Shown: piece after piece, positions 42,412 to 54,880 of the stretch
Layout: every line of letters begins with the position of its first letter
How positions within the stretch are numbered: position 1 is the stretch's first letter
IMG/VR virus record: IMGVR_UViG_3300020438_000007
Coordinates: 62,001 to 126,000 of that record
Length of the DNA stretch: 64,000 bases
Reading direction: 5' to 3' (one strand)
Position numbers and translations under genes: made by a program
The notes under the pieces: model-generated
The model's database searches: none
Told to the model about the DNA's origin: nothing
Seen by the model: the letters and a program-made list of their open reading frames with translations, nothing else

Positions 42412-43110
42412 ATGAAAAAGTATTTTATTGATGAAGAAGAAACATTTGCAATTAGTGACGAGTTAGGCGCAAGAGTAGAACTCATGGGATGGCAAGAAAT
42501 TCCCATAGTTTACGTTGATAATTTCTACAAGAATCCAGACAAGGTAAGGAATCTAGCACTCAGATGTCCAGGCACAAATAACCCTAGAATATGTGGAGGA
42601 GTGCCTGGAGTTAGGGTAGATATGAATATGAATTTAGATCATATGCACGATGTATTCAAACAAATTGCAAAAAATGTGTATGGACTGACAATAAAAGAAG
42701 ATCCTCAATTTGATCAAGCATGTTTAAATATTCCCTTTTCTGTCAACGTAACTCAATCAAAAGATAGAGTCAAAATACCTCATGTAGACTACCCACCAGA
42801 AACTAAAGGTAGAGGATGGGCTGGGTTAATATATCTAAACAAAGGTAAAGAATGTAAGGGTGGTACTGGGTTTTATACATATAAAGGGCAACAAGTTAAT
42901 CCATTCCAAGATGGAATTTGGACAGAAGATTTTGTTGATGATACTATAGGTCCTTGGGACTTAATACATCTAGCAGAAATGAAGTACAATAGAATGATAT
43001 TGTACCCTGATAATATTCTCCATGGCGCATATGATAAGCCTGGTTTCTTTGAAGGAGAGGACTATAGGTTGGCCCAAGTATTCTTTATACCACTACATTT
43101 TTTCTCATGA
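42412..43110 (+). CDS. DUF6445-family (2OG-Fe(II)-like) protein
   Basis: VDNFYKNPDKVR, PHVD, LIYLN, GGTGFY, MKYNRMILY, HG, RLAQVFF; probable start MKKYF at 42412. Confidence 0.7.
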   Translation: MKKYFIDEEETFAISDELGARVELMGWQEIPIVYVDNFYKNPDKVRNLALRCPGTNNPRICGGVPGVRVDMNMNLDHMHDVFKQIAKNVYGLTIKEDPQFDQACLNIPFSVNVTQSKDRVKIPHVDYPPETKGRGWAGLIYLNKGKECKGGTGFYTYKGQQVNPFQDGIWTEDFVDDTIGPWDLIHLAEMKYNRMILYPDNILHGAYDKPGFFEGEDYRLAQVFFIPLHFFS

Positions 43111-43940
43111 TTATTCTTACAGGATACAAAGGTTTTATAGGTCAAGCATTTGAAAAGAGAATAGATCCAGAAAATCTTTATAGAGTTGAAAAAGATGGTG
43201 CATTTGATTTCATAGATCAATATGATAAGTGGGATGAAGTAGAGTTTATTCTACATCAGGGAGCGCTCTCAAGCACTACTGAGACTGATGTAAATAAAAT
43301 TCACAAATACAATGTAGAGTTTTCAATCAAACTATTTGAGAAAGCAATAGAACACTCTATCCCAGTCAAATATGCTTCAAGTGCATCGGTCTATGGTAAG
43401 ATACATGCTGACTTTGGATACCTAAAAGGAACAATCAATCCATTAAATTTCTACGCACTGAGCAAAGCGACTGTAGATTATTGGGTTACAGATCACATGG
43501 ATGAGTTTAAATTGGTACAAGGATTTAGATACTTCAACGTATATGGAGAAGGTGAAGATCATAAAGGATCTCAAGCAAGTCCTATCAGTAAGTTTACCAA
43601 ACAAGCAAAAGAGAATGATGTCATCAAAATCTTTGAAGACTCAGAATATGCCTTTAGAGATTTTGTATGTGTAGATGATATAGTAGATGTTGTTCTAGAT
43701 AACACAGCAGGGAGTGGCATCTATGATGTTGGAACTGGTAATCCAGTCTCTTTCCAAGAGGTTGCGGAATTGGTTGCTAAGAAAGAAGGGGCAGATATTG
43801 AAGTAATCCCTTTCCCCAAACATCTAGAAGGTAAGTATCAAGAATACACATGTGCAGATACCTCTTGGTATGATCACGATTATAAATCAGTATCCGAATA
43901 TCTTAAATTACCAGCAACAACCACTCTGCCATCACATTGA
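43107..43940 (+). CDS. hldD: ADP-L-glycero-D-manno-heptose 6-epimerase-like SDR
   Basis: TGYKGFIG, HQGALSSTTETD, YASSASVYG, YALSK, FRYFNVYG, EDHKG, GKYQEYTCAD. Confidence 0.8.
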   Translation: MIILTGYKGFIGQAFEKRIDPENLYRVEKDGAFDFIDQYDKWDEVEFILHQGALSSTTETDVNKIHKYNVEFSIKLFEKAIEHSIPVKYASSASVYGKIHADFGYLKGTINPLNFYALSKATVDYWVTDHMDEFKLVQGFRYFNVYGEGEDHKGSQASPISKFTKQAKENDVIKIFEDSEYAFRDFVCVDDIVDVVLDNTAGSGIYDVGTGNPVSFQEVAELVAKKEGADIEVIPFPKHLEGKYQEYTCADTSWYDHDYKSVSEYLKLPATTTLPSH

Positions 43941-44338
43941 TTTTTTGGTACAGAATGTGACTCATCTTGGAAAATGACACACATTCCTTCATGTGGTTGA
44001 ATACTATGTCCGTCAAAGTTTAAAGGAGAACTGCCTGGCGGAGTAGAAACATAGTAAACAAATGAGTAATCATTTTTACCATGTCTATGTTCATAAGCAA
44101 AATCACCGTAATTATATACAGCACCCCATAATTGATATTTTATTTTATCTGAATCTAATTCTAATTTTTCTACAACCCAATCTTTTAACTTAATAAAAGG
44201 TTTAGGATATGTATGGTATCCTGTATGTTTCTCTACTGCAAGATTACTAAACTCGTATGTGTCATGAGGCAAAAAATCTATCCATGACCTCAGTTCTTTG
44301 TTCAAAGATAAATCAGGATAATATACAATGTCAATCAT
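43880..44338 (-). CDS. Putative 2OG-Fe(II) oxygenase (TIGR02466-like)
   Basis: EHRHG..YSFVYYV, EGMCVIF..HSVP, RVVVAGN. Confidence 0.72.
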   Translation of the reverse strand: MIDIVYYPDLSLNKELRSWIDFLPHDTYEFSNLAVEKHTGYHTYPKPFIKLKDWVVEKLELDSDKIKYQLWGAVYNYGDFAYEHRHGKNDYSFVYYVSTPPGSSPLNFDGHSIQPHEGMCVIFQDESHSVPKNQCDGRVVVAGNLRYSDTDL

Positions 44339-44933
44339 GATACATGGGTATATCGTAGTTGTAGTTTATAAAGGCAGTTAGTATATACTTGTCATGTGAT
44401 ATATTTACGTTAGATCCGTGTGGAAACATCCAGTTGCATGGGAATAATAATATTTTACCCATTTCACATTTACATCCAATATTCCAATCAGGGAAGAATG
44501 TTTCTCCTCCCTCATCCACATCATTCAAATATATGATACAAGCAAATAATCTGGATATAGTTCCACCCTGTGCTTGATCTACATGTGTTTTAAATATACC
44601 CTCCCCCTTTGGATATACTCTAATTGTATAATCCAATATTGCAAGATCTGATGATGGTAATACTGGTAATCGTAATCTATAATTCAAATATGCTTTCTGA
44701 ATTATATTAGTCATTAAGTTTGCATACTTATGTCCAGCCTCAAACATAAACTGAGTGCAGTTCTTATGTTCTTTGTTTACTAACTTACCTTTATATTCTC
44801 CGTCTTTAAAATGTTCTACTTTACCATCATCATGTAATTCTTTATGATCCCAGAAATACTTTATTAACTCATCACACTGTTCCTGTGACAACACATCTCT
44901 TTCGACATATATCATGTCGGTGATCTTATCCAT
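44331..44933 (-). CDS. 2OG-Fe(II) oxygenase (prolyl-4-hydroxylase-like)
   Basis: HVD, IIYLNDVDEGGETFF, GKILLFP..WMFPH. Confidence 0.85.
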   Translation of the reverse strand: MDKITDMIYVERDVLSQEQCDELIKYFWDHKELHDDGKVEHFKDGEYKGKLVNKEHKNCTQFMFEAGHKYANLMTNIIQKAYLNYRLRLPVLPSSDLAILDYTIRVYPKGEGIFKTHVDQAQGGTISRLFACIIYLNDVDEGGETFFPDWNIGCKCEMGKILLFPCNWMFPHGSNVNISHDKYILTAFINYNYDIPMYHD

Positions 44934-45333
44934 CTATTAAATCGCCAGGCATAATCCTATGTGAATCTGAATCCATATGTTCTGTACTAAACTCAAACAG
45001 TTCAGTATCTTCCAGTGCAAACATACGATGCTTCAGGCCGATGGGAACATGAAACTTGTCCCCTCTTCTTAATATTGTTATCTCTGCTTTTTCTATATCG
45101 TCATCCCATCCATGAAAGAGTTTGATCTTTCCACTCTGAACAAAAAATACTTCGTCTTTTAATTTATGGAAGTGCCATGAACACTGTTTATCCTTTGCAA
45201 TAAACAATAGTTTACCACAATACTTCTCGCAGTTTGCAATCCATTTTTCATATCCCCATCCCTTCGGCACATATTTAACAGGTTCTGCCGCACGAGCATT
45301 ACGAGGTCTTCTACTTGGTCCAAAAGAAGTCAT
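44926..45333 (-). CDS. Cupin-fold protein (sugar isomerase-like)
   Basis: VPKGWGYE, SWHFHKLKDEVF..SG, HVPIGLKHR. Confidence 0.8.
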   Translation of the reverse strand: MTSFGPSRRPRNARAAEPVKYVPKGWGYEKWIANCEKYCGKLLFIAKDKQCSWHFHKLKDEVFFVQSGKIKLFHGWDDDIEKAEITILRRGDKFHVPIGLKHRMFALEDTELFEFSTEHMDSDSHRIMPGDLIDG

Positions 45334-45646
45334 CAGAGTTTACACCTTTGTCGTCAATAAAGAAATCAGCATGTGGTTTACCTAAGATTAAAGAATGATA
45401 TTTACATCCCCAATCACTAAGTTGTTTTTCCGTAAGATCAAATAACAGAACAGATGCCTTTGTACTTGCATCTGGATCATCACCGAATCGACCCATACCT
45501 CTAGCGGTAAAGTAGGTGATGTTATGACCTTCATCATATAACTTATTTATGATAGCAATCCGATCCTTCCACGGTTCTGCGGTGTGGTAATCCCTTCCTA
45601 CAGTTGGACTACAAATAGTGCCATCAATATCTACACAGTATCTCAT
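45311..45646 (-). CDS. Minimal HAD-superfamily phosphatase
   Basis: VDIDGT motif I, FTAR motif II, GKP..D.FIDDK motifs III/IV. Confidence 0.82.
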   Translation of the reverse strand: MRYCVDIDGTICSPTVGRDYHTAEPWKDRIAIINKLYDEGHNITYFTARGMGRFGDDPDASTKASVLLFDLTEKQLSDWGCKYHSLILGKPHADFFIDDKGVNSDDFFWTK

Positions 45647-45888
45647 ATTATTTCATCTCCTTCCACTTCTTCCATTTCTAATTCATGAACTTGATCATGA
45701 AATACTTCATGTTCTCCGATACGATAGAGATGTTTCATTTCGCCATCTTTATCTTCTCCCTCTCCCAAGTATTCAATATCATCACAACGATTTTCACGCA
45801 ACCACGCTTGCAGTCTGTGGTGCATTAGATCCGCCTTGCCTATCGACATTTTTTCCATTTCCTTCTCCGTATAGTGAGATAATATCAT
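45643..45888 (-). CDS. Hypothetical protein
   Basis: 81-aa ORF; its start may lie downstream of the track start because of the overlap with the kinase gene. Confidence 0.5.
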   Translation of the reverse strand: MILSHYTEKEMEKMSIGKADLMHHRLQAWLRENRCDDIEYLGEGEDKDGEMKHLYRIGEHEVFHDQVHELEMEEVEGDEII

Positions 45889-46627
45889 TCCCAGTTAGAT
45901 AGTAAGCGCCAGGATGTGTGACTGATATTGCAGCAGCTCTATTTGCTAAATCAATAGACTTCCGTATATCCTTTGTTCTTAAAAATTCATAGACTAGAGC
46001 TGCCATAAAGGTATCTCCAGCACCACATACATCAAAAACTTTGACTACCTGTGGGAGAAATTTTAAACCAGCCCATAATGCACCATCATTTCCAAGAGTG
46101 ACAATAAGATGAGTGTCATTAGGTAAATGGTCTTTGTCAAGGTCATTATATTCTTTCTTGTTTATTTTCCAGAATACATTATCTTTATGAAAAAGTCTAC
46201 GCTTCTTAGTGTCTACGAACACTGGTCTGTTAAAATTATGACATAGATTCCATAAATCATCTTCATTAAGGTATCCTTTGTCATAATCTGAAATAACAAT
46301 TGCATCAGGATCCATGTGCAACATTGCCATTTTCAATTCAGCATTTGCGATTCTACCCACCTTTGGAGTTTCATCTAAACGCAAGAACTGATAACCACTG
46401 GTAGTATCTATGAATCTTGTTTTAGTTATCTGTTCCCTCTGCGAAAGTAGAACAGTATTAACACCAAATGCCTTGAGATTCAATTCAGTGTTTGCAGCCA
46501 TACCTGGCCTCTCTTCTATTCTAGTTTGATCTAAAACAGGGACAGGTTGTTCTGGACTCAACCTAGTAGTTTTGCCAAAGACATACTTGTCTGTACACTT
46601 ATCACCTATAACAATTACATTAGCCAC
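45794..46627 (-). CDS. Heptose-7-phosphate kinase (HldE/RfaE domain I, PfkB family)
   Basis: RLSPEQPVPV, GMAANT, ISDYDKG, VDTK, VFDVCGAGDTF. Confidence 0.88.
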   Translation of the reverse strand: MANVIVIGDKCTDKYVFGKTTRLSPEQPVPVLDQTRIEERPGMAANTELNLKAFGVNTVLLSQREQITKTRFIDTTSGYQFLRLDETPKVGRIANAELKMAMLHMDPDAIVISDYDKGYLNEDDLWNLCHNFNRPVFVDTKKRRLFHKDNVFWKINKKEYNDLDKDHLPNDTHLIVTLGNDGALWAGLKFLPQVVKVFDVCGAGDTFMAALVYEFLRTKDIRKSIDLANRAAAISVTHPGAYYLTGNDIISLYGEGNGKNVDRQGGSNAPQTASVVA

Positions 46628-47015
46628 GAATCTTCTTTATGGTATCGGTTGTTGAATAATTTAGACGAGGTAAGAACCTTACTTCTTTGGCAAATTTTCT
46701 GCCAACTACATCTCCACCTTTCCAGTCATCTCCTAACAATAGTATATCAGGAGAGTATAATTTTATCAACCCCTCTAATTCTTTCCTATCGTTAAAGTAA
46801 AAAACTTCATCGATATATTTTATCGCTTGTAACATCGAAACTCTGTCACAAAGGTTATTGATGGGCTTAGTTTCACCCTTATCTTGACGTATCTTCTCAT
46901 CGGTATCTGTTGCTACTATTAGTTTATCTCCTAGAGATTTTCCAACTTTAAATAATTCTATATGGCCTGGGTGTAGAATATCGAATGTTCCATTACACCA
47001 TACTATTCTATTCAT
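46620..47015 (-). CDS. Heptose-1-phosphate adenylyltransferase (HldE/RfaE domain II)
   Basis: NGTFDILHPGH, KGETKPIN, GDDW, YSTT. Confidence 0.85.
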   Translation of the reverse strand: MNRIVWCNGTFDILHPGHIELFKVGKSLGDKLIVATDTDEKIRQDKGETKPINNLCDRVSMLQAIKYIDEVFYFNDRKELEGLIKLYSPDILLLGDDWKGGDVVGRKFAKEVRFLPRLNYSTTDTIKKIRG

Positions 47016-48499
47016 AATGTATCTATGGTCTCACTAAGATAAAGTGTTTGAATAACAGAGTCTGCTTGATTTTTAGGCAGAGTGTTCTCAATATAATTTG
47101 TTAATCTAGGTATGACAGATTGATCTGTTTTCCAATACTCTTTAGGATTGATATCATTTGTCATTAACTGTAGTAACCATACTTGCCAGTTAGTACCATC
47201 AAAGAATGAACCCAACTTTCCTGTTTGAGGAGTTTTTACATTGGGATCTTGAATATATTCCTCTATTATTTTTTGCATTGGTGATTTCTGATATTTAGAT
47301 CTAACATAATCCCAAAACTTGCCTTCCCTTCTACAGTAGGAATAGTGCATATTTACATAATCCACTGCACTCTCATAACTACACTTCATTTTAGCATCAT
47401 AGAGAGGTGATTCTACTCTACTATTAAAGTAACCACCATAAAGACTTTCATCCAAATATTCAACACCTCTAATCATCAGTGCAAGTCCTGTACTTTCTAA
47501 TGGTTCAATAAATCCAGCAGAAAGTCCAATAGGAACTACATTACCCTCCCAGAAGTTTTTGACATATTGAGGTTTCCAATCAAGCAATCTCATTTCATCT
47601 GGTTTGATTCTACCGTTCCAATGATCCGAGAAAGCTTGTCTTACTTCATCTGGATCATTGATATCTCGATTGAAACAATATCCTGTACCTATTCTAGATC
47701 TTGTAGGAATCTTCCATATCCAACCATGTTCCTGTGCAGGGCAAGCAGTATATGGATGTTGTTCTACTCTGTAATCTTCATACTTTACTCTACCAGCAAG
47801 AGCAGCATTTATAAACAATCTATCACCTAGATCAGTATTATCTTTACCAATTAGAAGTTGTTTCCAACCAGTACAATCTACAAATAAATCTCCAGTAATT
47901 ATTGATCCATCATCTAATACCAATTCTTTGATATTGGATTTAGTTATATCGTCTGCTTGTCCATCTCTAATAACATTTACTACATCAGATTGAATATATT
48001 TACAATAAGGTATAGTGTGTTTCATTAAAAACTGCACTAGCTTTCCACAGTCAATCTGAAAGGCGTATGAATCATGAGTATAATCTGTTTCTATTCTATT
48101 TGACCTAGAAGAGACATACATTGGAGAGATATTTTTTATATCATACTTATCTTGAAATGATTGCCATAGGTCATATAAAGGTACTTTAGAATCTCCTACA
48201 CTTGTAAAAGAAAAAGGATGCCAAATTTCTTCATCTTCATGACCCCAGCCAGGAAATAATATACCAGACTTAAATGTTGCATCTACTTCTTTCAACCATT
48301 CTTTAGGTTCATATCCCATTTGTCGCATGACATTTGGGAAACTAAGAAGGGTTGCTTCTCCTACACCAATTCTTTCTGGTTCAGACTTATCGATAATTAC
48401 TACTTCAAAATCTTTTGACCATCTACGAGCAAACCAAGATGCTGTAATCCATCCAGCAGTTCCTCCCCCAACAATAACTAATCTTTTAATTCTTTTCAT
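47012..48499 (-). CDS. Flavin-dependent (tryptophan) halogenase-like protein
   Basis: GGGTAGW, GVGEAT, ATFKSGI (catalytic Lys position), FVDCTG, GWIWKIP, FIEPLESTG. Confidence 0.88.
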   Translation of the reverse strand: MKRIKRLVIVGGGTAGWITASWFARRWSKDFEVVIIDKSEPERIGVGEATLLSFPNVMRQMGYEPKEWLKEVDATFKSGILFPGWGHEDEEIWHPFSFTSVGDSKVPLYDLWQSFQDKYDIKNISPMYVSSRSNRIETDYTHDSYAFQIDCGKLVQFLMKHTIPYCKYIQSDVVNVIRDGQADDITKSNIKELVLDDGSIITGDLFVDCTGWKQLLIGKDNTDLGDRLFINAALAGRVKYEDYRVEQHPYTACPAQEHGWIWKIPTRSRIGTGYCFNRDINDPDEVRQAFSDHWNGRIKPDEMRLLDWKPQYVKNFWEGNVVPIGLSAGFIEPLESTGLALMIRGVEYLDESLYGGYFNSRVESPLYDAKMKCSYESAVDYVNMHYSYCRREGKFWDYVRSKYQKSPMQKIIEEYIQDPNVKTPQTGKLGSFFDGTNWQVWLLQLMTNDINPKEYWKTDQSVIPRLTNYIENTLPKNQADSVIQTLYLSETIDTL

Positions 48500-48541
48500 G
48501 GTCTTCTTGATATGGATATTCGTATTCTTTTATCTCTCTCA

Positions 48542-50344
48542 TCAGTTCTTTACTTCGATCATAAGACCATGTTCAGGCAGATAGAGGTATTCTATCAAAC
48601 TGTTTGCAAGAGTCCTCAGAGCGTCATCTAGGGTCTCTACAAGAGGTTCTCCGCCTAGGTTGAAGGATGTATTGAAGATAATAGGACATCCTGTCTTCTC
48701 GTAGAAGGTATTGATTACATTATAGTAATTTGGATTCACTTCTTTAGTAACAGTCTGTATCCTACATGTATCATCAACATGAATAATTGCTGGAATCTTT
48801 TCTTTGATTCCTTCTTGACATTTAACTGCATACATCATAAATGGTGTATCATCCATACCACGAAGATCAAACCATTCATGCACATGTTCTTTCAATATTG
48901 ATCCAGCAAAAGGCCTGAAATATTCACGACGTTTGATGGCATTGACATGATCTTTTCCTTTAGGATCTCTAGGATCGTACATGATTGATCTGTTACCCAA
49001 TGCACGAGGGCCAGCTTCCGACTTACCTTGGAACATTGCAACAATATTTTTCTTCGTAATCAAATCAACTACGTCTTCATCTGTTGCCTCAAAGATCCTA
49101 GTTGCATCATAATAATTTGCAAGGTCTGTAATATACTCGGTATCATATTCATGTACAGGTCCATAGTATAGATCTGTCATGGGTGGATGAACTTTCGTAT
49201 TCTTACTTACTTTCTGGTAGTGCCAGTACGCAGCACCTATCGCTGTTCCAGCATCATTACTTACTGGTTCTACAAATAGATTAATACCTTCATCTTTTAG
49301 TTGTTCAAGATACCAATAGTTTGCAACACAGTTTAATCCATATCCACCAGAGAGAACAACATTCTTTTCTCCACTCATCTTAACTGCCTTACGAATCAAA
49401 TCCAGAACCATCTGTTCTGATTCTATTTGAATAGCATAAGCCATATCTCTACGGTTTTGTAATTTAGTAATATCCTTTACCGATTGCGTATCCATAGGTT
49501 CTCTTAGTTCTACGAATCTACCTTTGTTTACTATAGCACCATTAGGATAGGTAGGTACAATAAGATCTCGATTAGTGGTAGACCAATCACTCATCCCATC
49601 ATGGTCAGTGTAGATATCTGGTATCTTTAAATTCTGTTGACCGTAAGGGAAGAGTCCCATAGTTTTTCCAGCTTCAATAGGAGACCAACCACAATATTGT
49701 GTTACTGCCTCATAAGCTTTTACAATACCAGCAGTGTCATCTAAAATTAATTCATGAGTTCCCTCCTCATCTTCTCTACTAGATGGGAAATTAAATAATC
49801 TTACAGCACCATAAGGACCTCTACCTCCCTGATGTTTGTATAGAGTCTTGAACTTATCTGGATATTCACATTTGATAATCGTTTCTAGTTCCCATGTCAT
49901 CTCCTGTTCACCATCAATCTCCATAGGGATGAATGTTCCAGCACCATCTACAATGACAGATACTGCACTCTCAAATCCTGATCTAAAGAAAGCACAAGAT
50001 GAATGAAGTTTATGATGAATATGACTGTAATCTACAACTTGAGGATGTTTATAGATGTCTGCTTGACGATCAATAAGACCTAGTTTTCTTGCAAGAGAAA
50101 CGTAGATAGGTTCTCCTGTAAAATCATTAGATGCAGCCTGATCTAGAGGTTGTGTATGTGCAACTACAAGATAATCAAGTGTATCGGTGTAATCCAATAT
50201 CTTGATCATGGATGCCAAAGGACCTCCATCATATTTCTTTCTTGATAGTCTCTCCTCTTCAATGGAGAAAACTAGTTGTCCATCTTTCAGTAGGCATACA
50301 CCAGAGTTGTGACCTCTAGCGATTGCAGCAATCCATTGTGTCAT
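48542..50344 (-). CDS. O-carbamoyltransferase (NodU/CmcH/TobZ family)
   Basis: HNSG, EEERLSRKK, HHKLH, SGGYGLNC, NDAG, GPRALGNRS, RREYFRPFA, NTSFN. Confidence 0.92.
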   Translation of the reverse strand: MTQWIAAIARGHNSGVCLLKDGQLVFSIEEERLSRKKYDGGPLASMIKILDYTDTLDYLVVAHTQPLDQAASNDFTGEPIYVSLARKLGLIDRQADIYKHPQVVDYSHIHHKLHSSCAFFRSGFESAVSVIVDGAGTFIPMEIDGEQEMTWELETIIKCEYPDKFKTLYKHQGGRGPYGAVRLFNFPSSREDEEGTHELILDDTAGIVKAYEAVTQYCGWSPIEAGKTMGLFPYGQQNLKIPDIYTDHDGMSDWSTTNRDLIVPTYPNGAIVNKGRFVELREPMDTQSVKDITKLQNRRDMAYAIQIESEQMVLDLIRKAVKMSGEKNVVLSGGYGLNCVANYWYLEQLKDEGINLFVEPVSNDAGTAIGAAYWHYQKVSKNTKVHPPMTDLYYGPVHEYDTEYITDLANYYDATRIFEATDEDVVDLITKKNIVAMFQGKSEAGPRALGNRSIMYDPRDPKGKDHVNAIKRREYFRPFAGSILKEHVHEWFDLRGMDDTPFMMYAVKCQEGIKEKIPAIIHVDDTCRIQTVTKEVNPNYYNVINTFYEKTGCPIIFNTSFNLGGEPLVETLDDALRTLANSLIEYLYLPEHGLMIEVKN

Positions 50345-50348
50345 AATC

Positions 50349-51602
50349 TCAATCTTTCTTTTCTATAGTAATTGCATTTTCTTTATCAGATTTTAACAAA
50401 TTCTTGATTTCAGATTGGAAACCTTTGTTATTCTTTGGCTTCTTTGGTTTTGGAAGTTCCATAGTAAAGGTAGGTTTTGGAGCACCACTCATCGTTGGTA
50501 CACTGTCTCCTTTTCCTGATGGCAACCAATTTGATGTTCCTTGCATTGGTTGTGGTTGTTGCATGGGAGGTGCAATACCTTGTTGTGGTTGTTGAGGTTG
50601 GTTTGGTGGACAAGATTGTCCTTGCTGTTGTTGTGGAGGAACAAAAGTACCTGTGTATGCTTTCGATTTACCCAATCTCTTCCTACAAGATGCAACAATT
50701 TCATCAATATGTTTCTTACTTAGTTCCATCGATTCATCATTGAAACGATCTATTGTTTCGTCCATTGCAATTCTGATAGGAGCATATTCTCTACGTCCAT
50801 TTCCAACATCAATAATATCGAAGTCTTTGTGGCCTGGATAACTAATGTTTTCTGGATATGTGGAACCAATCACAACGGTTGCAGTCTTATCAAATGATCT
50901 TGCAATATGTTGACCCATACTGTCACATCCTAAGAAGTGATCAGCAATCTCAATCACAGCAGCCCAAACTCTCATATCACTAATTTGTGGTCTAGCAATA
51001 GGATATTTACCTTCATTCTCCTCAACAGCAAAGTGATGTTCACTCATTACAATTACTGCGTAATCTTTCTTTAGACTATTGATAATATCTACAGCTCCTG
51101 TAAGAGGCATACTTCTGGAAGTTGGATCTGCAATAAACTCTCCCATCTGTTGAATAGATCTGCCAAATGGTTGAATTACAATTACCTTGTCTTTTTTAGT
51201 AACAGATTTAATTTCTTCAACAATATTATAGGCAGTAATGACCTCTGTTTTATTGAGATTCAATGTGGGTTTAGGAAGTTTTCTAGGTTCTTTTAACCCA
51301 TTAATTGCCATATCATATGCTTGTGCTAAATTGCACTGTTGATTATAATAGTGCCACACTCTATATGGTTCTGGACTTTCGCAGTCCCTTTGTTTAATAT
51401 GTTCTTGGAATACTCTTTTATGCCAATGGTCGTAGACCTTATCATCTAATGTCGGATGTCCTTTAAAGAAGTCAGTTCCGCCCTCACAAATGATAACAAA
51501 ATCATCATGGGTTTCTGCATATTTTTCAAATGCTGGTATTGAACTTATTACTCTCCCTGCCCCACCATTGATGAAGAATGCTTTTGATCTCATAGTTCTC
51601 AT
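50349..51602 (-). CDS. GT9-like (heptosyltransferase-like) glycosyltransferase with Q/P-rich tail
   Basis: GGAGRVISSIP (cf. GGxGD...P), IQPFG, FLGCDSMGQHIA (cf. FIGNDSG.MH.A), VVIGST. Confidence 0.6.
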   Translation of the reverse strand: MRTMRSKAFFINGGAGRVISSIPAFEKYAETHDDFVIICEGGTDFFKGHPTLDDKVYDHWHKRVFQEHIKQRDCESPEPYRVWHYYNQQCNLAQAYDMAINGLKEPRKLPKPTLNLNKTEVITAYNIVEEIKSVTKKDKVIVIQPFGRSIQQMGEFIADPTSRSMPLTGAVDIINSLKKDYAVIVMSEHHFAVEENEGKYPIARPQISDMRVWAAVIEIADHFLGCDSMGQHIARSFDKTATVVIGSTYPENISYPGHKDFDIIDVGNGRREYAPIRIAMDETIDRFNDESMELSKKHIDEIVASCRKRLGKSKAYTGTFVPPQQQQGQSCPPNQPQQPQQGIAPPMQQPQPMQGTSNWLPSGKGDSVPTMSGAPKPTFTMELPKPKKPKNNKGFQSEIKNLLKSDKENAITIEKKD

Positions 51603-51620
51603 AATTCCTATAGTATATAG

Positions 51621-52280
51621 TCACATAAAAAATACCTGTGCCAGACGAGGATGTTCCTTAAACATCTTTCGATTTATGTCTGCTCCGTGGGTACATTCAG
51701 CTTCATACATTATCATTCTATTATATTTCATTGGACATGTAAACTGTATATCTTTTCGTATATTGTAATCACCATAGGCATGATCTGTCAGATATTTGTA
51801 AAAATCTGTTCCGCCTTCGCACTCCTCATCTTTGTTCAAATAAACTAGAGCGGCCCAACTAGAATTATCGTCTTTGTGATGAGTGTAACAATAGACAGTC
51901 TTAGTAAATCTTTCATTTATATCTTTGTTGGTAGTATGGTTGACCCAGAACTTTTGATTATCCCATCTATAATCAAACATTCCTTCACTAAATTGAATAT
52001 TAGTCCATTCCGAATGTTGGCAAAGTTCTTTGAAAACTGGTTTCAAAATCTCAATCATATCTGGTCTATCTTCAACAACTCTCGTTCCTATAAGACCGCC
52101 ACAATGTTCTTTGTCACCTGTTCTATCGCATGATAGAGCGTAATCCCTGACTTCATCAGGGTTCTTGTAGAAGTCATCTACTACAAATACTTTTCTCCAC
52201 TGGTAACCAGCGTCACTAAATCTATCGTAGTCATAACATTTTTTTATAAGAGAAATCTGAACAGGATTTATTTCAAACAT
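51621..52280 (-). CDS. DUF6445-family (2OG-Fe(II)-like) protein
   Basis: VDDFYKNPDEVR, HHKD, LVYLN, GGTDFY, MKYNRMIMY, RLAQVFF; paralogue of 42412..43110. Confidence 0.7.
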   Translation of the reverse strand: MFEINPVQISLIKKCYDYDRFSDAGYQWRKVFVVDDFYKNPDEVRDYALSCDRTGDKEHCGGLIGTRVVEDRPDMIEILKPVFKELCQHSEWTNIQFSEGMFDYRWDNQKFWVNHTTNKDINERFTKTVYCYTHHKDDNSSWAALVYLNKDEECEGGTDFYKYLTDHAYGDYNIRKDIQFTCPMKYNRMIMYEAECTHGADINRKMFKEHPRLAQVFFM

Positions 52281-52285
52281 GTAAT

Positions 52286-52313
52286 AAAAAAGATCCCCTT
52301 ATTAGGAGGATCT
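52286..52313 (-). terminator. Rho-independent terminator
   Basis: AGATCCTCC-TAATAA-GGGGATCT + T-tract. Confidence 0.7.
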
Positions 52314-52342
52314 TAGTAGGATATTTTATATATAAAAGTTTT

Positions 52343-53128
52343 TTAGATTGAATTAGGAGGTTGCCATGCTGTTGCTCCATCTGCATCGGATTCTGGGTCA
52401 GCAGGTGGATTTGCAAATCCAGGCTCAAATGGGAACATCAAGTCAGCAAAGTTTGGATGAACTCCAGCTGCAATCATCTTATTAGGAAGGTCCCTTAGTG
52501 CTTGGCGGTATGCTTTCCACTGGTCTTTAAGTGCATCAGGCATATCTTCTGCAAGTTGACCATCACTATTAGAAAGAACATTGTCTCTGTGACCTCTAAC
52601 ATGTTCCCATGTCTTGTCCTCATCAACACCGTTTAACTTCTGTCTAGGTGTGAAGTTGCCAATGGTAATATCGTTGGGCCCAGCAGAGCCAGGGTTTGCA
52701 ACTCTGATACTATCATAGTCAAAAAAGTCATCAGCGAATATAGTTGAAGAAAATGTAAACTGAGGATACACAGATCCATCTACCACTGGAGAGCCAGGAT
52801 GGTTCGTGTCTACACCAGCACCTCTGTCTTCTTCTTTCTCGTTTACAACAGGTCCTCTTAACTGACAGATAAGTGTATGTAAATCACTTGATGCACAGTC
52901 AACCTCGTACCATTGTACAACGTCAGCTGGTTTTGGACGACCATCTGCGATATCATCCTCTGTTAGAGGACCATATACTTCTCTTCCTTCTGCATTAATT
53001 TGCAGAAAAATCTTGTCTGGACCATCATAAGTTTGGTCTCTTTGGTTTCCATCAGATTTTGAGTGATCTGTAAGGAAAGCGTTCGGAAGATCTAACTTCC
53101 AGTTATGTGAAATAATTTTTGTTGCCAT
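52343..53128 (-). CDS. Tail fibre assembly chaperone-like protein
   Basis: C-terminal WEHVRGHRDNVLSNSD....WKAYRQALRDLP typical of tail assembly chaperones. Confidence 0.72.
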   Translation of the reverse strand: MATKIISHNWKLDLPNAFLTDHSKSDGNQRDQTYDGPDKIFLQINAEGREVYGPLTEDDIADGRPKPADVVQWYEVDCASSDLHTLICQLRGPVVNEKEEDRGAGVDTNHPGSPVVDGSVYPQFTFSSTIFADDFFDYDSIRVANPGSAGPNDITIGNFTPRQKLNGVDEDKTWEHVRGHRDNVLSNSDGQLAEDMPDALKDQWKAYRQALRDLPNKMIAAGVHPNFADLMFPFEPGFANPPADPESDADGATAWQPPNSI

Positions 53129-53160: not shown

Positions 53161-53168
53161 TATTTATA
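53161..53168 (-). promoter_or_regulatory. T4-type late promoter TATAAATA
   Basis: Exact consensus fused to a terminator T-tract, upstream of the chaperone gene. Confidence 0.78.
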
Positions 53169-53192
53169 AAAAAAGAGGGTCATAGACCCTCT
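53168..53192 (-). terminator. Rho-independent terminator after the Cys-rich triplet
   Basis: AGAGGGTC-TAT-GACCCTCT + T-tract. Confidence 0.75.
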
Positions 53193-53272: not shown

Positions 53273-54064
53273 TTAGACGTAGGTGATTTTAACGAGTCCT
53301 CCTCCACCTTGACCGCCCTGTCCGCAACAACTACTTCCACAGTAGTTACTGTTTGCACCTTGTCCGCCGTGTCCATAGGGAACTGTCCAACAACCACATC
53401 TCATCCAACACTGTCTTTGTCCATATGAAACACCAAGAGTTCCGATGAATGGAGCACCTGTTGGTCTACCTTCGTTATAGTAACAGTGACAGTTGAATCC
53501 GTCAGGTCTGTATGAGTTACCACCGTGGTTGCCCATTCCGAAGTCTCCTCCGTGAGCGCCAGGTTGCATACAGCAAGTATGGAATTCAGAATAACAGTTT
53601 GCAGACCAGTCACCAGTTGCACAACCTCTAACACCACCTAAGGCACAGAAGTTAGATAGGTTATATCCATTTACATAGGAGTTACATCCGCAACATCCTG
53701 TACACTCTCTAGAACAACATCTATAAACACCAGCAGCACAGACACTGTATTGGCAACCAGACTTAGTACTAATAGTTTTAGTATTATAGTACCCTCCTCC
53801 AGCACCATGCCAGTTTTGACATCTGTTACATGAACATGCACCGTGTCCGTTACCTCCAGATCCCCATATCTCAAATGTAGCTCGTGTTACACCCGTTGGA
53901 ACTGTCCAAAGGCAACAACAGCCAGGTGTACAGTAACATGGATGTCCATAGACCCATTTTACACACCAGTTTGAGAAAGAACCCGCTTGAACCTTTGATG
54001 CTGGAATACTTCCATCCTCAAATGTCGAGGCATTAATTTGTTTATAACTTGAGTAAGTAGCCAT
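53273..54064 (-). CDS. Cys-rich Gly-rich fibre-tip-like protein, paralogue 3
   Basis: About 30 Cys in 263 aa; WTVPTGV..EIWGSGG...GGQGGGGLVKITY. Confidence 0.75.
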   Translation of the reverse strand: MATYSSYKQINASTFEDGSIPASKVQAGSFSNWCVKWVYGHPCYCTPGCCCLWTVPTGVTRATFEIWGSGGNGHGACSCNRCQNWHGAGGGYYNTKTISTKSGCQYSVCAAGVYRCCSRECTGCCGCNSYVNGYNLSNFCALGGVRGCATGDWSANCYSEFHTCCMQPGAHGGDFGMGNHGGNSYRPDGFNCHCYYNEGRPTGAPFIGTLGVSYGQRQCWMRCGCWTVPYGHGGQGANSNYCGSSCCGQGGQGGGGLVKITYV

Positions 54065-54073
54065 TTCTTCCCC

Positions 54074-54868
54074 TTAGAAGTATGTAATTTTGACGAGACC
54101 GCCACCGCCAGTACCGCCTTGTCCGCAGCACCCACCACAATATGTAGTCATAGCGCTCTGTCCGCCGTGACCGTAAGGTACGATCCAGCAACCACAACGA
54201 ATCCAACATTCTCTAATAGATTGAGTAACTTGTGTACCAATCAACGGTGCAGAAGTAGGTCTATGACCATAGTGGTAACAGTGACACCAACCTCTATAAG
54301 TATCATGTCTTGATGAAGACCAAGTACTGGTCTGGTTGCCCATTCCGAAGTCTCCGTTGTTTGAAGTAGGACCTAAACAACAGCAATTTTGTGCGTTACA
54401 AGCAGTTGACCAACTTGGGTTAGCGTTTCCACGGTTTCCACCTTTGGCACAGAAGTTAGATAAGTTGTATCCATTTACATAAGATGAACAACCTGTACAT
54501 CCATAACACTCTCTAGAGAGACATGGATAAACACCAGCCGCACAAATACTGTAAGAACAACCACCATTGGTTGTAATCATTTTGGAGTTGTAGTATCCTC
54601 CAGAAGCACCATGATAGTGCTGACATCTGTTACATGAACATGCACCAGTACCATTTCCTCCAGCACCCCACATCTGAATCCACATGTTTCCAACCCCAGT
54701 AGGGGCTGACCAGTTACAGCAACAGCCTGGTGAACAACGGCAGTTTGTACCGAATACCCATTTTACGCCGTAACTTTCGTTAGGAGATCCACTGAAACTT
54801 CCAGCGTCAAGGCTATTGTCCTCTAAGGAATCTCCACTGATTTTTTTGTATGATGAATAACTTGCCAT
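54074..54868 (-). CDS. Cys-rich Gly-rich fibre-tip-like protein, paralogue 2
   Basis: About 27 Cys in 264 aa; same scaffold. Confidence 0.75.
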   Translation of the reverse strand: MASYSSYKKISGDSLEDNSLDAGSFSGSPNESYGVKWVFGTNCRCSPGCCCNWSAPTGVGNMWIQMWGAGGNGTGACSCNRCQHYHGASGGYYNSKMITTNGGCSYSICAAGVYPCLSRECYGCTGCSSYVNGYNLSNFCAKGGNRGNANPSWSTACNAQNCCCLGPTSNNGDFGMGNQTSTWSSSRHDTYRGWCHCYHYGHRPTSAPLIGTQVTQSIRECWIRCGCWIVPYGHGGQSAMTTYCGGCCGQGGTGGGGLVKITYF

Positions 54869-54880
54869 TTTTGTTTAATC

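What the first reader, a model, noticed from the sequence alone, without database searches (positions are those of the whole stretch)
42412..52280. Candidate self-contained heptosyl/carbamoyl modification system beside the tail-fibre genes
The 10-kb island encodes heptose kinase, adenylyltransferase, 6-epimerase, HAD phosphatase, cupin, GT9-like transferase, O-carbamoyltransferase, halogenase and four 2OG/DUF6445 oxygenases. It sits between neck and fibre genes. Such genes are usually called LPS-modification AMGs, but marine Synechococcus LPS is reported to lack heptose. Bacterial Aah/TibC enzymes do heptosylate Ser/Thr-rich adhesins using ADP-heptose. Inference: the phage may build a carbamoylated/hydroxylated heptose glycan on its own Ser/Thr-rich fibres, or add a foreign sugar to the host surface for superinfection exclusion.
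Basis: partly seen in the sequence, partly recalled or inferred. Interest (0 to 1): 0.75.

Follow-up and report, generated by a model that had tools for sequence, protein, structure and literature searches.

The report
Phage heptose-sugar module beside tail fibres
A marine cyanophage carries, next to its tail-fibre genes, a conserved gene set that most likely makes an activated seven-carbon sugar, attaches it and carbamoylates it. The genes were already known as "LPS genes" of unknown role, and what the sugar is attached to is still open.

Summary
Window 42412-52280, from a relative of Synechococcus phage S-SSM7, encodes every enzyme type listed, between the neck genes gp13/gp14 and the fibre genes.

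- **Core and extras.** Seven genes form a conserved core: a GT9-like transferase, an O-carbamoyltransferase, a heptose-1-P adenylyltransferase, a heptose-7-P kinase, a small HAD phosphatase, a cupin and an HldD-like epimerase. They keep one order in 22 of 23 loci that span them, across several cyanophage genera, always downstream of fibre genes. The halogenase and the 2OG oxygenases vary in number and are optional.
- **Selection.** dN/dS is 0.03-0.23 for the core genes, so they are not filler DNA.
- **Missing isomerase.** No GmhA isomerase exists in six complete phage genomes. Each has one metal-binding cupin whose fold best matches the type II phosphomannose-isomerase domain, so it probably replaces GmhA.
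- **The 417-aa protein.** It has a GT9 heptosyltransferase fold and the ADP-heptose motif, but an Arg sits where WaaC has its catalytic Asp.
- **Fibre link elsewhere.** Relatives of this transferase lie beside tail-fibre genes in unrelated Vibrio and Aeromonas phages and on one metagenomic contig.

The best reading is tail-fibre glycosylation with carbamoyl-heptose. Host-surface modification remains a strong rival. DNA glycosylation is unlikely.

The parts
42412..43110 (+). DUF6445 protein (2OG-oxygenase-like, HxD...H); flanks the module in most S-SSM7-like loci
   Evidence: Pfam PF20043 E 4e-15; phrog_1644; conserved at this position
43107..43940 (+). HldD-like SDR, putative ADP-glycero-manno-heptose 6-epimerase (core gene)
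   Evidence: TIGR02197 E 8.4e-62, below the equivalog cut-off; GxxGxxG and YxxxK are readable; present in all 23 spanning loci
43880..44338 (-). Small 2OG-Fe(II) oxygenase (variable accessory gene)
   Evidence: PF13759/PF13640, weak; phrog_81; present or absent across loci
44331..44933 (-). 2OG-Fe(II) oxygenase, P4H-type (variable accessory gene)
   Evidence: PF13640 E 6e-9; phrog_61; variable across loci
44926..45333 (-). Metal-binding cupin (core gene); proposed sedoheptulose-7-P isomerase replacing GmhA
   Evidence: The HxH..E..H motif is invariant. The model has pLDDT 83. The top 17 Swiss-Prot fold hits are the type II PMI domain of ManC/XanB/AlgA. There is one copy in each of 6 phage genomes that lack a SIS isomerase. 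dN/dS is 0.03-0.10.
45311..45646 (-). 111-aa HAD phosphatase (core gene); proposed heptose-1,7-bisphosphate 7-phosphatase (GmhB analogue); misnamed 'phosphoheptose isomerase' in RefSeq relatives
   Evidence: PDB 9iqw E 6.4e-16 and 1xpj E 5.7e-5; TIGR01689; motifs DxDGT, T47, K90 and DD98-99 are invariant
45643..45888 (-). 81-aa conserved ORF of unknown function; overlaps the kinase 3' end
   Evidence: phrog_2020 E 1.4e-20; conserved in many loci
45794..46627 (-). PfkB-family kinase, HldE domain I-like (heptose-7-P 1-kinase; core gene)
   Evidence: TIGR02198 E 1.9e-38, against ribokinase 1.5e-13; the N-terminal 'RLSPEQPVPV' and the 'GAGD' motif are readable
46620..47015 (-). HldE domain II-like nucleotidyltransferase (heptose-1-P adenylyltransferase; core gene)
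   Evidence: TIGR02199 E 2e-29, with TagD 8e-22 as runner-up. The HxGH and STT motifs are readable. There is no STTR5 Arg (PMC11573728). dN/dS is 0.03-0.06.
47012..48499 (-). Flavin-dependent halogenase, VirX1/PrnA-like (variable accessory gene; 0-2 copies in spanning loci, up to 3 elsewhere)
   Evidence: PF04820 E 1e-82; PDB VirX1 6qgm E 1.8e-48; copy number
48542..50344 (-). NodU/TobZ/NovN-type O-carbamoyltransferase (core gene); always directly after the GT9-like gene
   Evidence: PF16861 E 1e-59 and PF02543; PDB NovN, GdmN and TobZ E 1e-44 to 1e-49; adjacent in 43/43 loci
50349..51602 (-). GT9-like glycosyltransferase (phrog_8954; residues 1-320) with a Q/P-rich tail (residues about 320-417); core gene
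   Evidence: AF2 pLDDT 96. The top 30 PDB hits and top 20 Swiss-Prot hits are all GT9 heptosyltransferases. 41/61 relatives hit PF01075. The D227/H232 motif aligns with WaaC D261/H266, and R17 aligns with WaaC D13.
51621..52280 (-). DUF6445 protein (2OG-oxygenase-like), immediately upstream of the GT9-like gene
   Evidence: PF20043/PF13640; phrog_1644; atlas neighbours are 2OG-FeII_Oxy_3
52290..52314 (-). Terminator-like hairpin between the fibre-chaperone-like gene and the island
   Evidence: 9-bp stem followed by a T-run; an RNA-library contig spans it
52343..53128 (-). Tail-fibre assembly chaperone-like protein, preceded by a T4 late-promoter-like TATAAATA at 53161-53168
   Evidence: PF16778 E 2e-10; phrog_4912; motif found
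53273..55666 (-). Three Cys/Gly-rich paralogues (27-30 Cys each), candidate fibre-tip adhesins and candidate acceptors
   Evidence: Composition; alignment; PF21722; the family is found only in phages that carry the GT9-like gene
55718..60157 (-). 1479-aa tail fibre protein
   Evidence: Orthologue of S-SSM7 SSSM7_113 'tail fiber protein'; S+T 20%, Gly 13%

Best explanation
The island is a late-region glycosylation module built around seven conserved genes.

Step 1 (inferred from homology): five enzymes turn the pentose-phosphate/Calvin-cycle intermediate sedoheptulose-7-phosphate into ADP-L-glycero-beta-D-manno-heptose. The cupin acts as a type-II-PMI-like ketose/aldose isomerase in place of GmhA. 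The PfkB kinase makes the 1,7-bisphosphate. The small HAD phosphatase removes the 7-phosphate. The HldC-like enzyme adds AMP. The HldD-like SDR epimerises C6.

Step 2 (fold and motif shown, activity inferred): the GT9-like enzyme transfers the heptose.

Step 3 (inferred from invariable adjacency and from the Pseudomonas WapO precedent): the NodU/TobZ-type enzyme O-carbamoylates the heptose, probably at O7.

Step 4 (inferred from gene neighbourhood only): the acceptor is most likely the phage's own tail-fibre apparatus. The candidates are the adjacent Cys/Gly-rich tip proteins or the 1479-aa fibre, which would give a carbamoyl-heptosylated receptor-binding organelle.

The halogenase and the 2OG/DUF6445 oxygenases are lineage-variable decorations or serve unrelated functions.
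For: - **Gene identities:**
- **Conserved order:** 22 of 23 spanning loci share the core order and the 23rd has all seven genes. The carbamoyltransferase follows the GT9-like gene in 43/43 loci. Fibre genes lie upstream in 39/39. The same order holds in P-SSM2, S-CAM3 and S-SSM7, three genera.
- **Purifying selection:** dN/dS 0.03-0.23 for the core genes, compared with 0.08-0.09 for gp13.
- **GT9 fold and motif:** fold plus the conserved ADP-heptose motif.
- **Isomerase gap:** no SIS isomerase and exactly one cupin in 6/6 complete phage genomes. The cupin's best Swiss-Prot fold matches are the PMI domain of ManC/XanB/AlgA, rmsd 1.3-2.5 A. Its 3His/Glu site is invariant.
- **Phosphatase precedent:** 1xpj-type small HADs dephosphorylate sugar 1,n-bisphosphates in other phage sugar pathways (PMC13326640).
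- **Host supply:** gmhA is absent from 121 of 151 sampled picocyanobacterial genomes.
- **Fibre link elsewhere:** GT9-like relatives without heptose-synthesis genes in the fetched neighbourhoods sit beside tail-fibre genes in Vibrio N4-like phages, in Aeromonas phage HJ05 and on a metagenomic contig after three Collar-domain genes. Vibrio and Aeromonas are known to make heptose themselves (established knowledge).
- **Co-occurrence:** the Cys/Gly-rich family is found only in phages that carry the GT9-like gene.
- **Chemical precedent:** 7-O-carbamoyl-heptose made by a GT9 enzyme plus the carbamoyltransferase WapO in Pseudomonas (PMC8005017).
- **RNA libraries:** island sequence is present in seawater RNA libraries at depths like the neighbouring fibre gene.
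Against: - No activity, product or acceptor has been measured.
- All heptose enzymes score below the NCBIfam equivalog cut-offs, so the sugar or the nucleotide could differ.
- The closest folds of the transferase are LPS/LOS heptosyltransferases, not the protein-modifying BAHTs.
- The catalytic Asp of WaaC is an Arg here.
- A terminator-like hairpin separates the island from the fibre genes.
- In S-SM2 and P-TIM68 the same five sugar genes sit in large polysaccharide-type clusters far from structural genes.
- Synteny among the 45 cyanophage loci partly reflects common descent, and linkage alone could explain the co-occurrence with the Cys-rich genes.
- The cupin's top PDB hit is the CapF C3-epimerase domain, so it may modify the nucleotide sugar rather than isomerise S7P.
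- The RNA-library signal cannot exclude contaminating DNA.
Confidence: 0.42

Rival explanations
1. Host-envelope remodelling. The module makes ADP-heptose, and the GT9-like enzyme adds carbamoyl-heptose to a host glycolipid or polysaccharide (LPS core, O-chain or an Und-PP-linked precursor) during infection. This would block superinfection or stop progeny from re-adsorbing to debris. It is the classical 'LPS AMG' reading.
For: - The closest folds are LPS/LOS heptosyltransferases; 13 such entries rank ahead of the protein-modifying BAHTs.
- Carbamoyl-heptose is known from the LPS core (PMC8005017).
- The same five sugar genes sit in multi-GT polysaccharide-like clusters in S-SM2 and P-TIM68.
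- A terminator-like hairpin separates the island from the fibre genes.
- In temperate phages, receptor-modifying genes commonly lie beside tail-fibre genes (established knowledge, e.g. P22 gtr).
Against: - Cyanobacterial LPS is reported to lack Kdo and heptose, the canonical GT9 acceptors (PMC4515613).
- The catalytic Asp13 equivalent is replaced.
- The GT9-like gene is embedded among tail genes in strictly lytic-type lineages: T4-like, N4-like and a myovirus.
- It co-occurs with a fibre-tip-like protein family.
Confidence: 0.3
2. Small-molecule (natural-product-like) pathway. The heptose, carbamoyl, halogenase and oxygenase genes together build a soluble halogenated, carbamoylated heptoside during infection.
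For: - The nearest solved relatives of the carbamoyltransferase are antibiotic-tailoring enzymes: NovN, GdmN, TobZ.
- The halogenase is related to VirX1 and tryptophan halogenases.
- ADP-heptose feeds natural products such as septacidin in bacteria (PMC11461863).
Against: - Halogenase and 2OG genes vary from 0 to 3 copies while the sugar core is constant.
- No scaffold-forming enzyme (NRPS, PKS and the like) was seen in the island.
- GT9-like relatives occur alone beside fibre genes in other phages.
Confidence: 0.08
3. DNA hypermodification. The heptose is transferred to a hydroxymethylated or hydroxylated pyrimidine in phage DNA, as in metagenomic phage clusters that make 5-heptosyl-hydroxymethylcytosine.
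For: - Phage pathways that put heptose on 5hmC exist, using a HAD-like/kinase enzyme, a cytidylyltransferase and a GT-B enzyme (bioRxiv 10.1101/2023.12.21.572611).
- Small 1xpj-type HADs occur in DNA-arabinosylation pathways (PMC13326640).
- Several 2OG oxygenases are present.
Against: - The whole genome has no C5-cytosine methyltransferase, no ThyA/dCMP-hydroxymethylase family member and no Tet_JBP match. The Tet_JBP control did not ring, so that absence is weak.
- The transferase is GT9-like, not T4 beta-GT-like.
- It sits in the structural module.
Confidence: 0.03
4. Sub-rival on the cupin. It is not the isomerase but a CapF/RmlC-style epimerase or ketoisomerase that, together with the SDR, reshapes the NDP-heptose. 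The phage would then depend on a host GmhA.
For: - The top PDB fold hit is the Zn-binding cupin domain of CapF, a C3-epimerase fused to an SDR.
- The cupin and the SDR are neighbours.
- About 13-20% of picocyanobacterial genomes do have a GmhA-like gene.
Against: - Most sampled host-family genomes lack gmhA, so the kinase would have no substrate there.
- The Swiss-Prot fold ranking is led by 17 type II PMI domains.
- Five genes match five required activities one to one.
Confidence: 0.3

Closest known systems
Bacterial ADP-L-glycero-beta-D-manno-heptose pathway (GmhA, HldE or HldA/HldC, GmhB, HldD)
   Same: The kinase, the adenylyltransferase and the 6-epimerase are the best family matches. The kinase and nucleotidyltransferase are split, as in HldA/HldC organisms. 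The pathway needs five activities and the cassette has five genes.
   Different: There is no SIS-type GmhA. The phosphatase is a 111-aa 1xpj/9iqw-type HAD, not GmhB. All scores fall below the equivalog cut-offs. A PMI-like cupin is an obligate member of the cassette.
GT9 LPS/LOS heptosyltransferases (WaaC, WaaF, WaaQ, OpsX)
   Same: GT-B fold, with top structural hits at E 1e-9 to 1e-11. The C-terminal D-[ST]-G-x-x-H-x-A donor motif is conserved.
   Different: This protein has no Pfam GT9 hit of its own. The catalytic Asp13 position is Arg. It has a Q/P-rich C-terminal tail. It is phage-encoded in the tail-fibre region, and the host is reported to lack the Kdo/heptose core.
Autotransporter heptosyltransferases (TibC, Aah, BAHTCr)
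   Same: GT9-related fold that uses ADP-heptose to modify a protein. They are structural hits at E 1e-7 to 1e-9.
   Different: The phage protein lacks the roughly 90-residue N-terminal extension; BAHT alignments start at residues 86-123. There is no sign of the iron-binding Cys cluster. LPS enzymes rank slightly higher.
Pseudomonas inner-core 7-O-carbamoyl-heptose (WaaF/WaaC plus carbamoyltransferase WapO, PA5005)
   Same: A GT9 enzyme paired with a NodU-family carbamoyltransferase acting on heptose (PMC8005017).
   Different: That is a chromosomal LPS-core system with a lipid A-Kdo acceptor. Here it is a phage module with an unknown acceptor. Orthology of the carbamoyltransferase to WapO was not tested.
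Cyanophage 'LPS gene' clusters (T4-GC 302-308) of P-SSM2, S-SSM7 and S-SM2
   Same: These are the same genes. The window is 84% identical in DNA to S-SSM7 over 95% of the island. Co-occurrence of GC304, 305, 307 and 308 was already noted (PMC3037559).
   Different: The literature left the function open ('stuffer DNA' or LPS). It did not recognise the GT9-like fold, the HAD or cupin identities, or the fibre association in unrelated phages.
Virion glycosylation by phage- or virus-encoded GTs (mycobacteriophages, chloroviruses)
   Same: GT genes placed next to the structural genes whose products they modify (recalled from the literature, not tested here).
   Different: Those systems use hexose-type sugars from host nucleotide-sugar pools. 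Heptose and carbamoylation are not described there.

Membership tests
ADP-heptose biosynthesis pathway | SIS-domain sedoheptulose-7-P isomerase (GmhA) | tested here: not met
   No PF13580 match in the window's own genome or in 5 related complete phage genomes. The controls rang.
ADP-heptose biosynthesis pathway | HldE domain I / HldA kinase (PfkB fold, GAGD motif; the best family match is the heptose-7-P kinase) | tested here: met
   TIGR02198 E 1.9e-38, far ahead of ribokinase at 1.5e-13. At 132 bits it is below the 345-bit equivalog cut-off. The motifs are readable.
ADP-heptose biosynthesis pathway | HldE domain II / HldC heptose-1-P adenylyltransferase | tested here: inconclusive
   TIGR02199 E 2e-29 is the best match, but TagD cytidylyltransferase follows at 8e-22 and both are below cut-off. 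The nucleotide specificity was not determined, and there is no STTR5 Arg.
ADP-heptose biosynthesis pathway | GmhB-type HAD 7-phosphatase | tested here: not met
   No GmhB family hit. The protein belongs to the short 1xpj/9iqw/TIGR01689 HAD group and its catalytic motifs are intact. The same chemistry is plausible.
ADP-heptose biosynthesis pathway | HldD NADP-dependent 6-epimerase (SDR) | tested here: met
   TIGR02197 E 8.4e-62, against GalE at 7e-12. At 209 bits it is below the 275-bit cut-off.
Glycosyltransferase family 9 | GT-B fold closest to known heptosyltransferases | tested here: met
   The top 30 PDB hits and top 20 Swiss-Prot hits are all GT9 enzymes, probability 1.0.
Glycosyltransferase family 9 | Donor-binding motif D-[ST]-G-x-x-H-[LIV]-A (WaaC D261/H266) | tested here: met
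   D227 and H232 are invariant in 61 family members and align with WaaC and WaaF.
Glycosyltransferase family 9 | N-terminal catalytic Asp (WaaC D13) | tested here: not met
   It aligns with the near-invariant R17. That alignment segment is by itself non-significant, but the position agrees with the model's beta1-loop-alpha1.
Glycosyltransferase family 9 | Pfam PF01075 match above the gathering score | tested here: not met
   No hit for this protein, even at E 10. 41 of 61 relatives give hits at E up to 0.1 (best 1.2e-8), some below the gathering score.
Autotransporter heptosyltransferases (BAHT: TibC/Aah) | N-terminal extension and iron-binding Cys cluster; dodecamer | tested here: not met
   The BAHT alignments start at their residues 86-123 while the query starts at residues 1-5. 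The oligomeric state is not testable here.
NodU/CmcH/TobZ O-carbamoyltransferases | Carbam_trans_N (Kae1-like) plus Carbam_trans_C (YrdC-like) domains | tested here: met
   PF02543 E 5.6e-25 and PF16861 E 1.3e-59. PDB NovN, GdmN and TobZ at E 1e-44 to 1e-49.
Type II phosphomannose isomerase (cupin domain of AlgA/XanB/ManC) | Cupin fold with His/Glu metal site; closest structural relatives are PMI domains | tested here: met
   The top 17 Swiss-Prot fold hits have rmsd 1.3-2.5 A over 110-119 residues. H54, H56, E61 and H102 are invariant.
Type II phosphomannose isomerase (cupin domain of AlgA/XanB/ManC) | Sequence membership (PF01050) and isomerase activity | tested here: not met
   No PF01050 hit, only a weak Lyx_isomer hit at 0.011. 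Some related viral clusters carry PF01050 in 13-36% of their members. Activity is not testable here.
Flavin-dependent halogenases | Trp_halogenase domain with GxGxxG and WxWxIP motifs | tested here: met
   PF04820 E 1e-82. 'GGGTAGW' and 'WIWKIP' are readable. VirX1 at 1.8e-48.

The most novel reading that the evidence does not exclude
Cyanophages of several genera carry a fully self-sufficient ADP-heptose pathway in which a PMI-like cupin has replaced GmhA. They use it, with a new fibre-associated branch of GT9 enzymes (Arg in place of the catalytic Asp) and an O-carbamoyltransferase, to put carbamoyl-heptose on their own Cys/Gly-rich receptor-binding fibre tips. As far as my literature searches show, this would be the first heptosylated virion. 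The same transferase family would do this job in unrelated Vibrio and Aeromonas phages, using the host's ADP-heptose.
Probability: 0.28. Interest if true: 0.8.

Novelty: new variant of a known kind. Interest (0 to 1): 0.58.

Why it matters
These genes are abundant in the ocean. The searches found more than 3,000 GT9-like and about 8,000 cupin homologues in public metagenomes, and for twenty years they have been filed as 'LPS genes' of unknown use.

If the module decorates tail fibres, it adds a post-translational layer to host recognition and host range in the viruses that control marine Synechococcus and Prochlorococcus. It would also link phage redirection of the pentose-phosphate pathway to virion construction, because S7P is the precursor.

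A cupin that replaces GmhA would be a new enzyme solution for a pathway that is a drug target and an innate-immune signal source in bacteria.

If instead the target is the host surface, it would be a clear case of a lytic phage installing a foreign sugar on its host.

Tried and rejected
1. **'Stuffer DNA' (suggested in PMC3037559): rejected.** dN/dS is 0.03-0.23 and the gene order is conserved.
2. **GmhA elsewhere in the genome: not found**.
3. **DNA 5hmC-type glycosylation: made unlikely.** C5-methyltransferase, ThyA-like and Tet_JBP genes are absent. The Tet_JBP control did not ring, so that part is weak.
4. **Membership in the TibC/Aah family: rejected**.
5. **Direct sequence searches of the 417-aa protein: gave nothing.** Pfam, NCBIfam and PDB phmmer had no useful hits. 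Only the family profile and the fold search worked.
6. **Context look-ups of four distant GT9-like representatives: uninformative.** The contigs were 1-3 kb.
7. **The 9iqw structure:** it could not be linked to a paper.
8. **Promoter scan:** no more sigma-70-like sites than in shuffled sequence. TATAAATA is not enriched window-wide.
9. **Metatranscriptome contigs:** they show the island in RNA libraries but cannot prove transcription or operon structure.
10. **STTR5 hallmark for CTP/UTP promiscuity:** absent in the nucleotidyltransferase, but this does not settle specificity.
11. **Cupin homologue search:** it returned only close, mostly viral relatives, so there was no independent cellular context for the cupin.

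Full report
**What the window is.** The flagged stretch is 84% identical in DNA, over 95% of its length, to Synechococcus phage S-SSM7, a T4-like cyanomyovirus (Kyanoviridae, Lipsvirus). The gene order is the same apart from a few insertions and deletions. The window lies in a 230,739-bp viral record judged 99% complete.

**Check of the observation.**
- DUF6445 proteins: 42412-43110(+) and 51621-52280(-).
- HldD-like SDR: 43107-43940(+).
- Two 2OG oxygenases: 43880-44338(-) and 44331-44933(-).
- Cupin: 44926-45333(-).
- 111-aa HAD phosphatase: 45311-45646(-).
- HldE-domain-I-like PfkB kinase: 45794-46627(-).
- HldE-domain-II-like nucleotidyltransferase: 46620-47015(-).
- Flavin halogenase: 47012-48499(-).
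- NodU/TobZ-type O-carbamoyltransferase: 48542-50344(-).
- 417-aa protein with no Pfam or NCBIfam hit: 50349-51602(-).

On one side lie gp13, gp14 and gp15. On the other lie a fibre-assembly-chaperone-like gene, three Cys/Gly-rich paralogues (27-30 Cys each) and a 1479-aa fibre. The heptose enzymes are clearly closest to their E. coli counterparts, but all score below the NCBIfam equivalog cut-offs.

**The 417-aa protein is GT9-like.**
- An exhaustive search found 406 representative clusters of relatives.
- Of 61 aligned members, 41 give matches to Pfam GT9 at E up to 0.1.
- The family profile's best PDB hits are WaaF and WaaC.
- An AlphaFold model with pLDDT 96 matches only GT9 heptosyltransferases in the top 30 PDB and top 20 Swiss-Prot hits.
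- The invariant D227/H232 motif aligns with the ADP-heptose-binding D261/H266 of WaaC.
- The catalytic Asp13 of WaaC corresponds to a near-invariant Arg (R17).
- LPS/LOS enzymes rank slightly ahead of the protein-modifying TibC/Aah group, whose N-terminal extension the phage protein lacks.

The Aah/TibC analogy is one of possible mechanism, not of family membership.

**Core versus accessory genes.** I fetched 42 related viral loci and three annotated phages, then mapped all window genes onto them.
- Twenty-three loci span from the GT9-like gene to the epimerase.
- Twenty-two of them carry GT9-like, carbamoyltransferase, adenylyltransferase, kinase, HAD, cupin and epimerase in the same order.
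- The remaining locus has all seven, with the HAD-cupin pair inverted.
- The carbamoyltransferase directly follows the GT9-like gene in 43/43 loci.
- Fibre genes lie upstream in 39/39 loci.
- Between the fixed genes, halogenases (0-2 copies in spanning loci, three in L016), 2OG oxygenases (0-3) and a second carbamoyltransferase (0-1) come and go.

P-SSM2 (Salacisavirus) and S-CAM3 (Charybdisvirus) have the same core, flanked on both sides by tail-fibre genes. The five sugar-nucleotide genes also occur without the GT9-like and carbamoyltransferase pair. In P-TIM68 and S-SM2 they sit inside large sugar clusters with other glycosyltransferases, away from structural genes. Sullivan et al. had already noted that T4-GCs 304, 305, 307 and 308 co-occur, and asked whether these 'LPS genes' are functional or stuffer DNA (PMC3037559). 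Pairwise dN/dS of 0.03-0.23 for the core genes, compared with 0.08-0.09 for the essential gp13, answers that: they are maintained by selection.

**Is the pathway self-contained?**
- No SIS-domain GmhA is encoded in this genome or in five related complete genomes. Each has exactly one copy of the cupin.
- The cupin keeps an invariant HxH...E...H metal site and is the most constrained gene of the island.
- Its model's 17 best Swiss-Prot matches are all the C-terminal cupin domain of ManC/XanB/AlgA, rmsd 1.3-2.5 A. By established knowledge this is the type II phosphomannose-isomerase domain.
- Fructose-6-P to mannose-6-P is the hexose counterpart of the GmhA reaction. I therefore propose that the cupin is the missing sedoheptulose-7-P isomerase, so that five genes cover five activities.
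- The caveat is that the best PDB hit is the CapF cupin, a C3-epimerase domain. A sugar-nucleotide-modifying role cannot be excluded.

The 111-aa protein is annotated 'phosphoheptose isomerase' in RefSeq relatives. It is in fact a HAD phosphatase with all four catalytic motifs invariant, related to PDB 9iqw and 1xpj. HADs of this type remove the distal phosphate from a sugar 1,5-bisphosphate in phage DNA-arabinosylation pathways (PMC13326640). That is the same logic as GmhB. A Science study, which I read only through commentaries, reports functional NDP-heptose enzymes in viruses, with the phosphatase 'absent' and the purpose unknown (PMC11461863, PMC11573728). The nucleotidyltransferase here lacks the STTR5 arginine that marks CTP/UTP-promiscuous enzymes.

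**Host side.** Reviews state that cyanobacterial LPS lacks heptose and Kdo (PMC4515613). I sampled 151 genomes of the family that contains Synechococcus RCC307. Thirty have a GmhA-like match, and about 20 have a strong HldE-like kinase. These are mostly the same genomes, with the two genes a few kb apart. RCC307, Prochlorococcus SS51 and Synechococcus PH41509 have none. Heptose is therefore foreign to most, but not all, potential hosts.

**What is the acceptor?** This cannot be settled from sequence. The evidence that leans towards the fibres is as follows.
- The module sits in the late structural region, co-directional with the fibre genes, in three or more cyanophage genera.
- Members of the same GT9-like family (phrog_8954) lie between tail-fibre or tail genes in N4-like Vibrio phages. 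One lies directly after a fibre-like gene and before the sheath gene in Aeromonas myophage HJ05. One occurs as a GT8-GT9-like fusion right after three Collar-domain genes on a metagenomic contig.
- No heptose-synthesis genes appear in the fetched neighbourhoods of those loci, which fits the cyanophage cassette being a donor supply for hosts that lack ADP-heptose. Vibrio and Aeromonas are known to make heptose themselves (established knowledge).
- The Cys/Gly-rich tip-like family is detectable only in phages that carry the GT9-like gene, out of 50,697 records.

The evidence that leans towards the host envelope is as follows.
- The nearest folds are LPS/LOS heptosyltransferases.
- The chemical precedent for carbamoyl-heptose I found is the Pseudomonas LPS core (WapO; PMC8005017).
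- The cassette is used in polysaccharide-like clusters in S-SM2 and P-TIM68.
- A terminator-like hairpin at 52290-52314 lies between the chaperone-like gene and the island.

DNA glycosylation with heptose exists in other phages (bioRxiv 10.1101/2023.12.21.572611). This genome, however, has no C5-methyltransferase, no ThyA-like hydroxymethylase and no Tet_JBP match, and the transferase is not beta-GT-like.

**Expression.** Four seawater RNA libraries from two studies contain exact-match contigs across the halogenase, carbamoyltransferase, GT9-like, DUF6445 and chaperone-like genes. Depths are similar to or above the neighbouring fibre-region gene, and one contig spans the hairpin. Contaminating DNA cannot be excluded, so this is consistent with transcription but does not prove it.

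**Verdict.** The choice between virion and host-surface acceptor is open, with a modest lean to the fibres. The genes themselves are known. New here are:
- the assignment of the GT9-like fold, with its Asp-to-Arg change;
- the HAD and cupin reassignments, with the cupin-for-GmhA hypothesis;
- the separation of core from accessory genes;
- the fibre association of the transferase family in unrelated phages.

Noticed in passing
window 53273-54064, 54074-54868, 54881-55666 (- strand): Three tandem paralogues (60-65% identical) with 27-30 cysteines and 17-19% glycine each and a Gly_rich_2 domain. They may be alternative fibre-tip adhesins. Among 50,697 phage records the family was detectable only in phages that also carry the GT9-like gene.
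   Followed up: partly
L001, L002, L003, L046, L047 (RefSeq annotations of S-SSM7, P-SSM2, S-CAM3, P-TIM68, S-SM2); window 45311-45646 and 44926-45333: Likely misannotations that propagate through cyanophage records. 'Phosphoheptose isomerase' is a small HAD phosphatase. 'Cysteine dioxygenase' is the PMI-like cupin. 'Minor coat protein' is a DUF6445 2OG-oxygenase-like protein.
   Followed up: yes
window 51554-51556 (codon of R17 of the GT9-like protein); alignment A1: The position of the WaaC catalytic Asp13 is a near-invariant Arg inside a G-rich loop ('GGAGRV..IPAL') that looks like the MurG G-loop. E78-P79-Y80 and D159 are invariant or nearly so, with no assigned role. This hints at a different catalytic base or a phosphate-bearing acceptor.
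   Followed up: partly
window 50349-50642: The GT9-like protein ends in a Gln/Pro-rich, probably disordered tail of about 100 residues with a basic terminus. The tail is variable in length or absent in relatives (335-420 aa).
   Followed up: no
window 53161-53192 and 52290-52314 (- strand): There are two strong terminator-like hairpins. The first is immediately followed by a T4 late-promoter-like TATAAATA upstream of the chaperone-like gene. The second separates that gene from the island.
   Followed up: partly
Host-family genomes G010, G013, G037, G061, G069, G119 and others: About 13% of 151 sampled picocyanobacterial genomes carry a GmhA-like and an HldE-like gene within a few kb of each other. 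A minority of hosts therefore may make heptose, contrary to the general statement that cyanobacterial LPS lacks it.
   Followed up: partly
L132:5270-6946: A 558-aa fusion of a GT8 domain with a GT9-like domain sits directly downstream of three phage tail Collar-domain genes on an 8.8-kb metagenomic contig.
   Followed up: partly
window 45643-45888 vs 45794-46627: A conserved 81-aa ORF (phrog_2020) overlaps the 3' end of the kinase ORF by 95 nt in another frame. The last roughly 25 residues of the kinase ORF may not be real coding sequence.
   Followed up: no
window 39267-41555: The gp14 neck protein is 762 aa and carries a Laminin_G_3 (concanavalin-like lectin) domain, a carbohydrate-binding-type fold on the neck.
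   Followed up: no
L016, L017, L018-L020, L025, L034-L037: Relatives carry two or three divergent halogenase paralogues in tandem (36-65% identical to the window's copy) at the same insertion point between the carbamoyltransferase and the adenylyltransferase.
   Followed up: no
L046 (P-TIM68) and L047 (S-SM2): In these phages the five-gene heptose cassette is embedded in a cluster with a transketolase-like protein, a Zn alcohol dehydrogenase, a class II aldolase (S-SM2 only) and other glycosyltransferases. This suggests a different, possibly more elaborate, sugar product.
   Followed up: no
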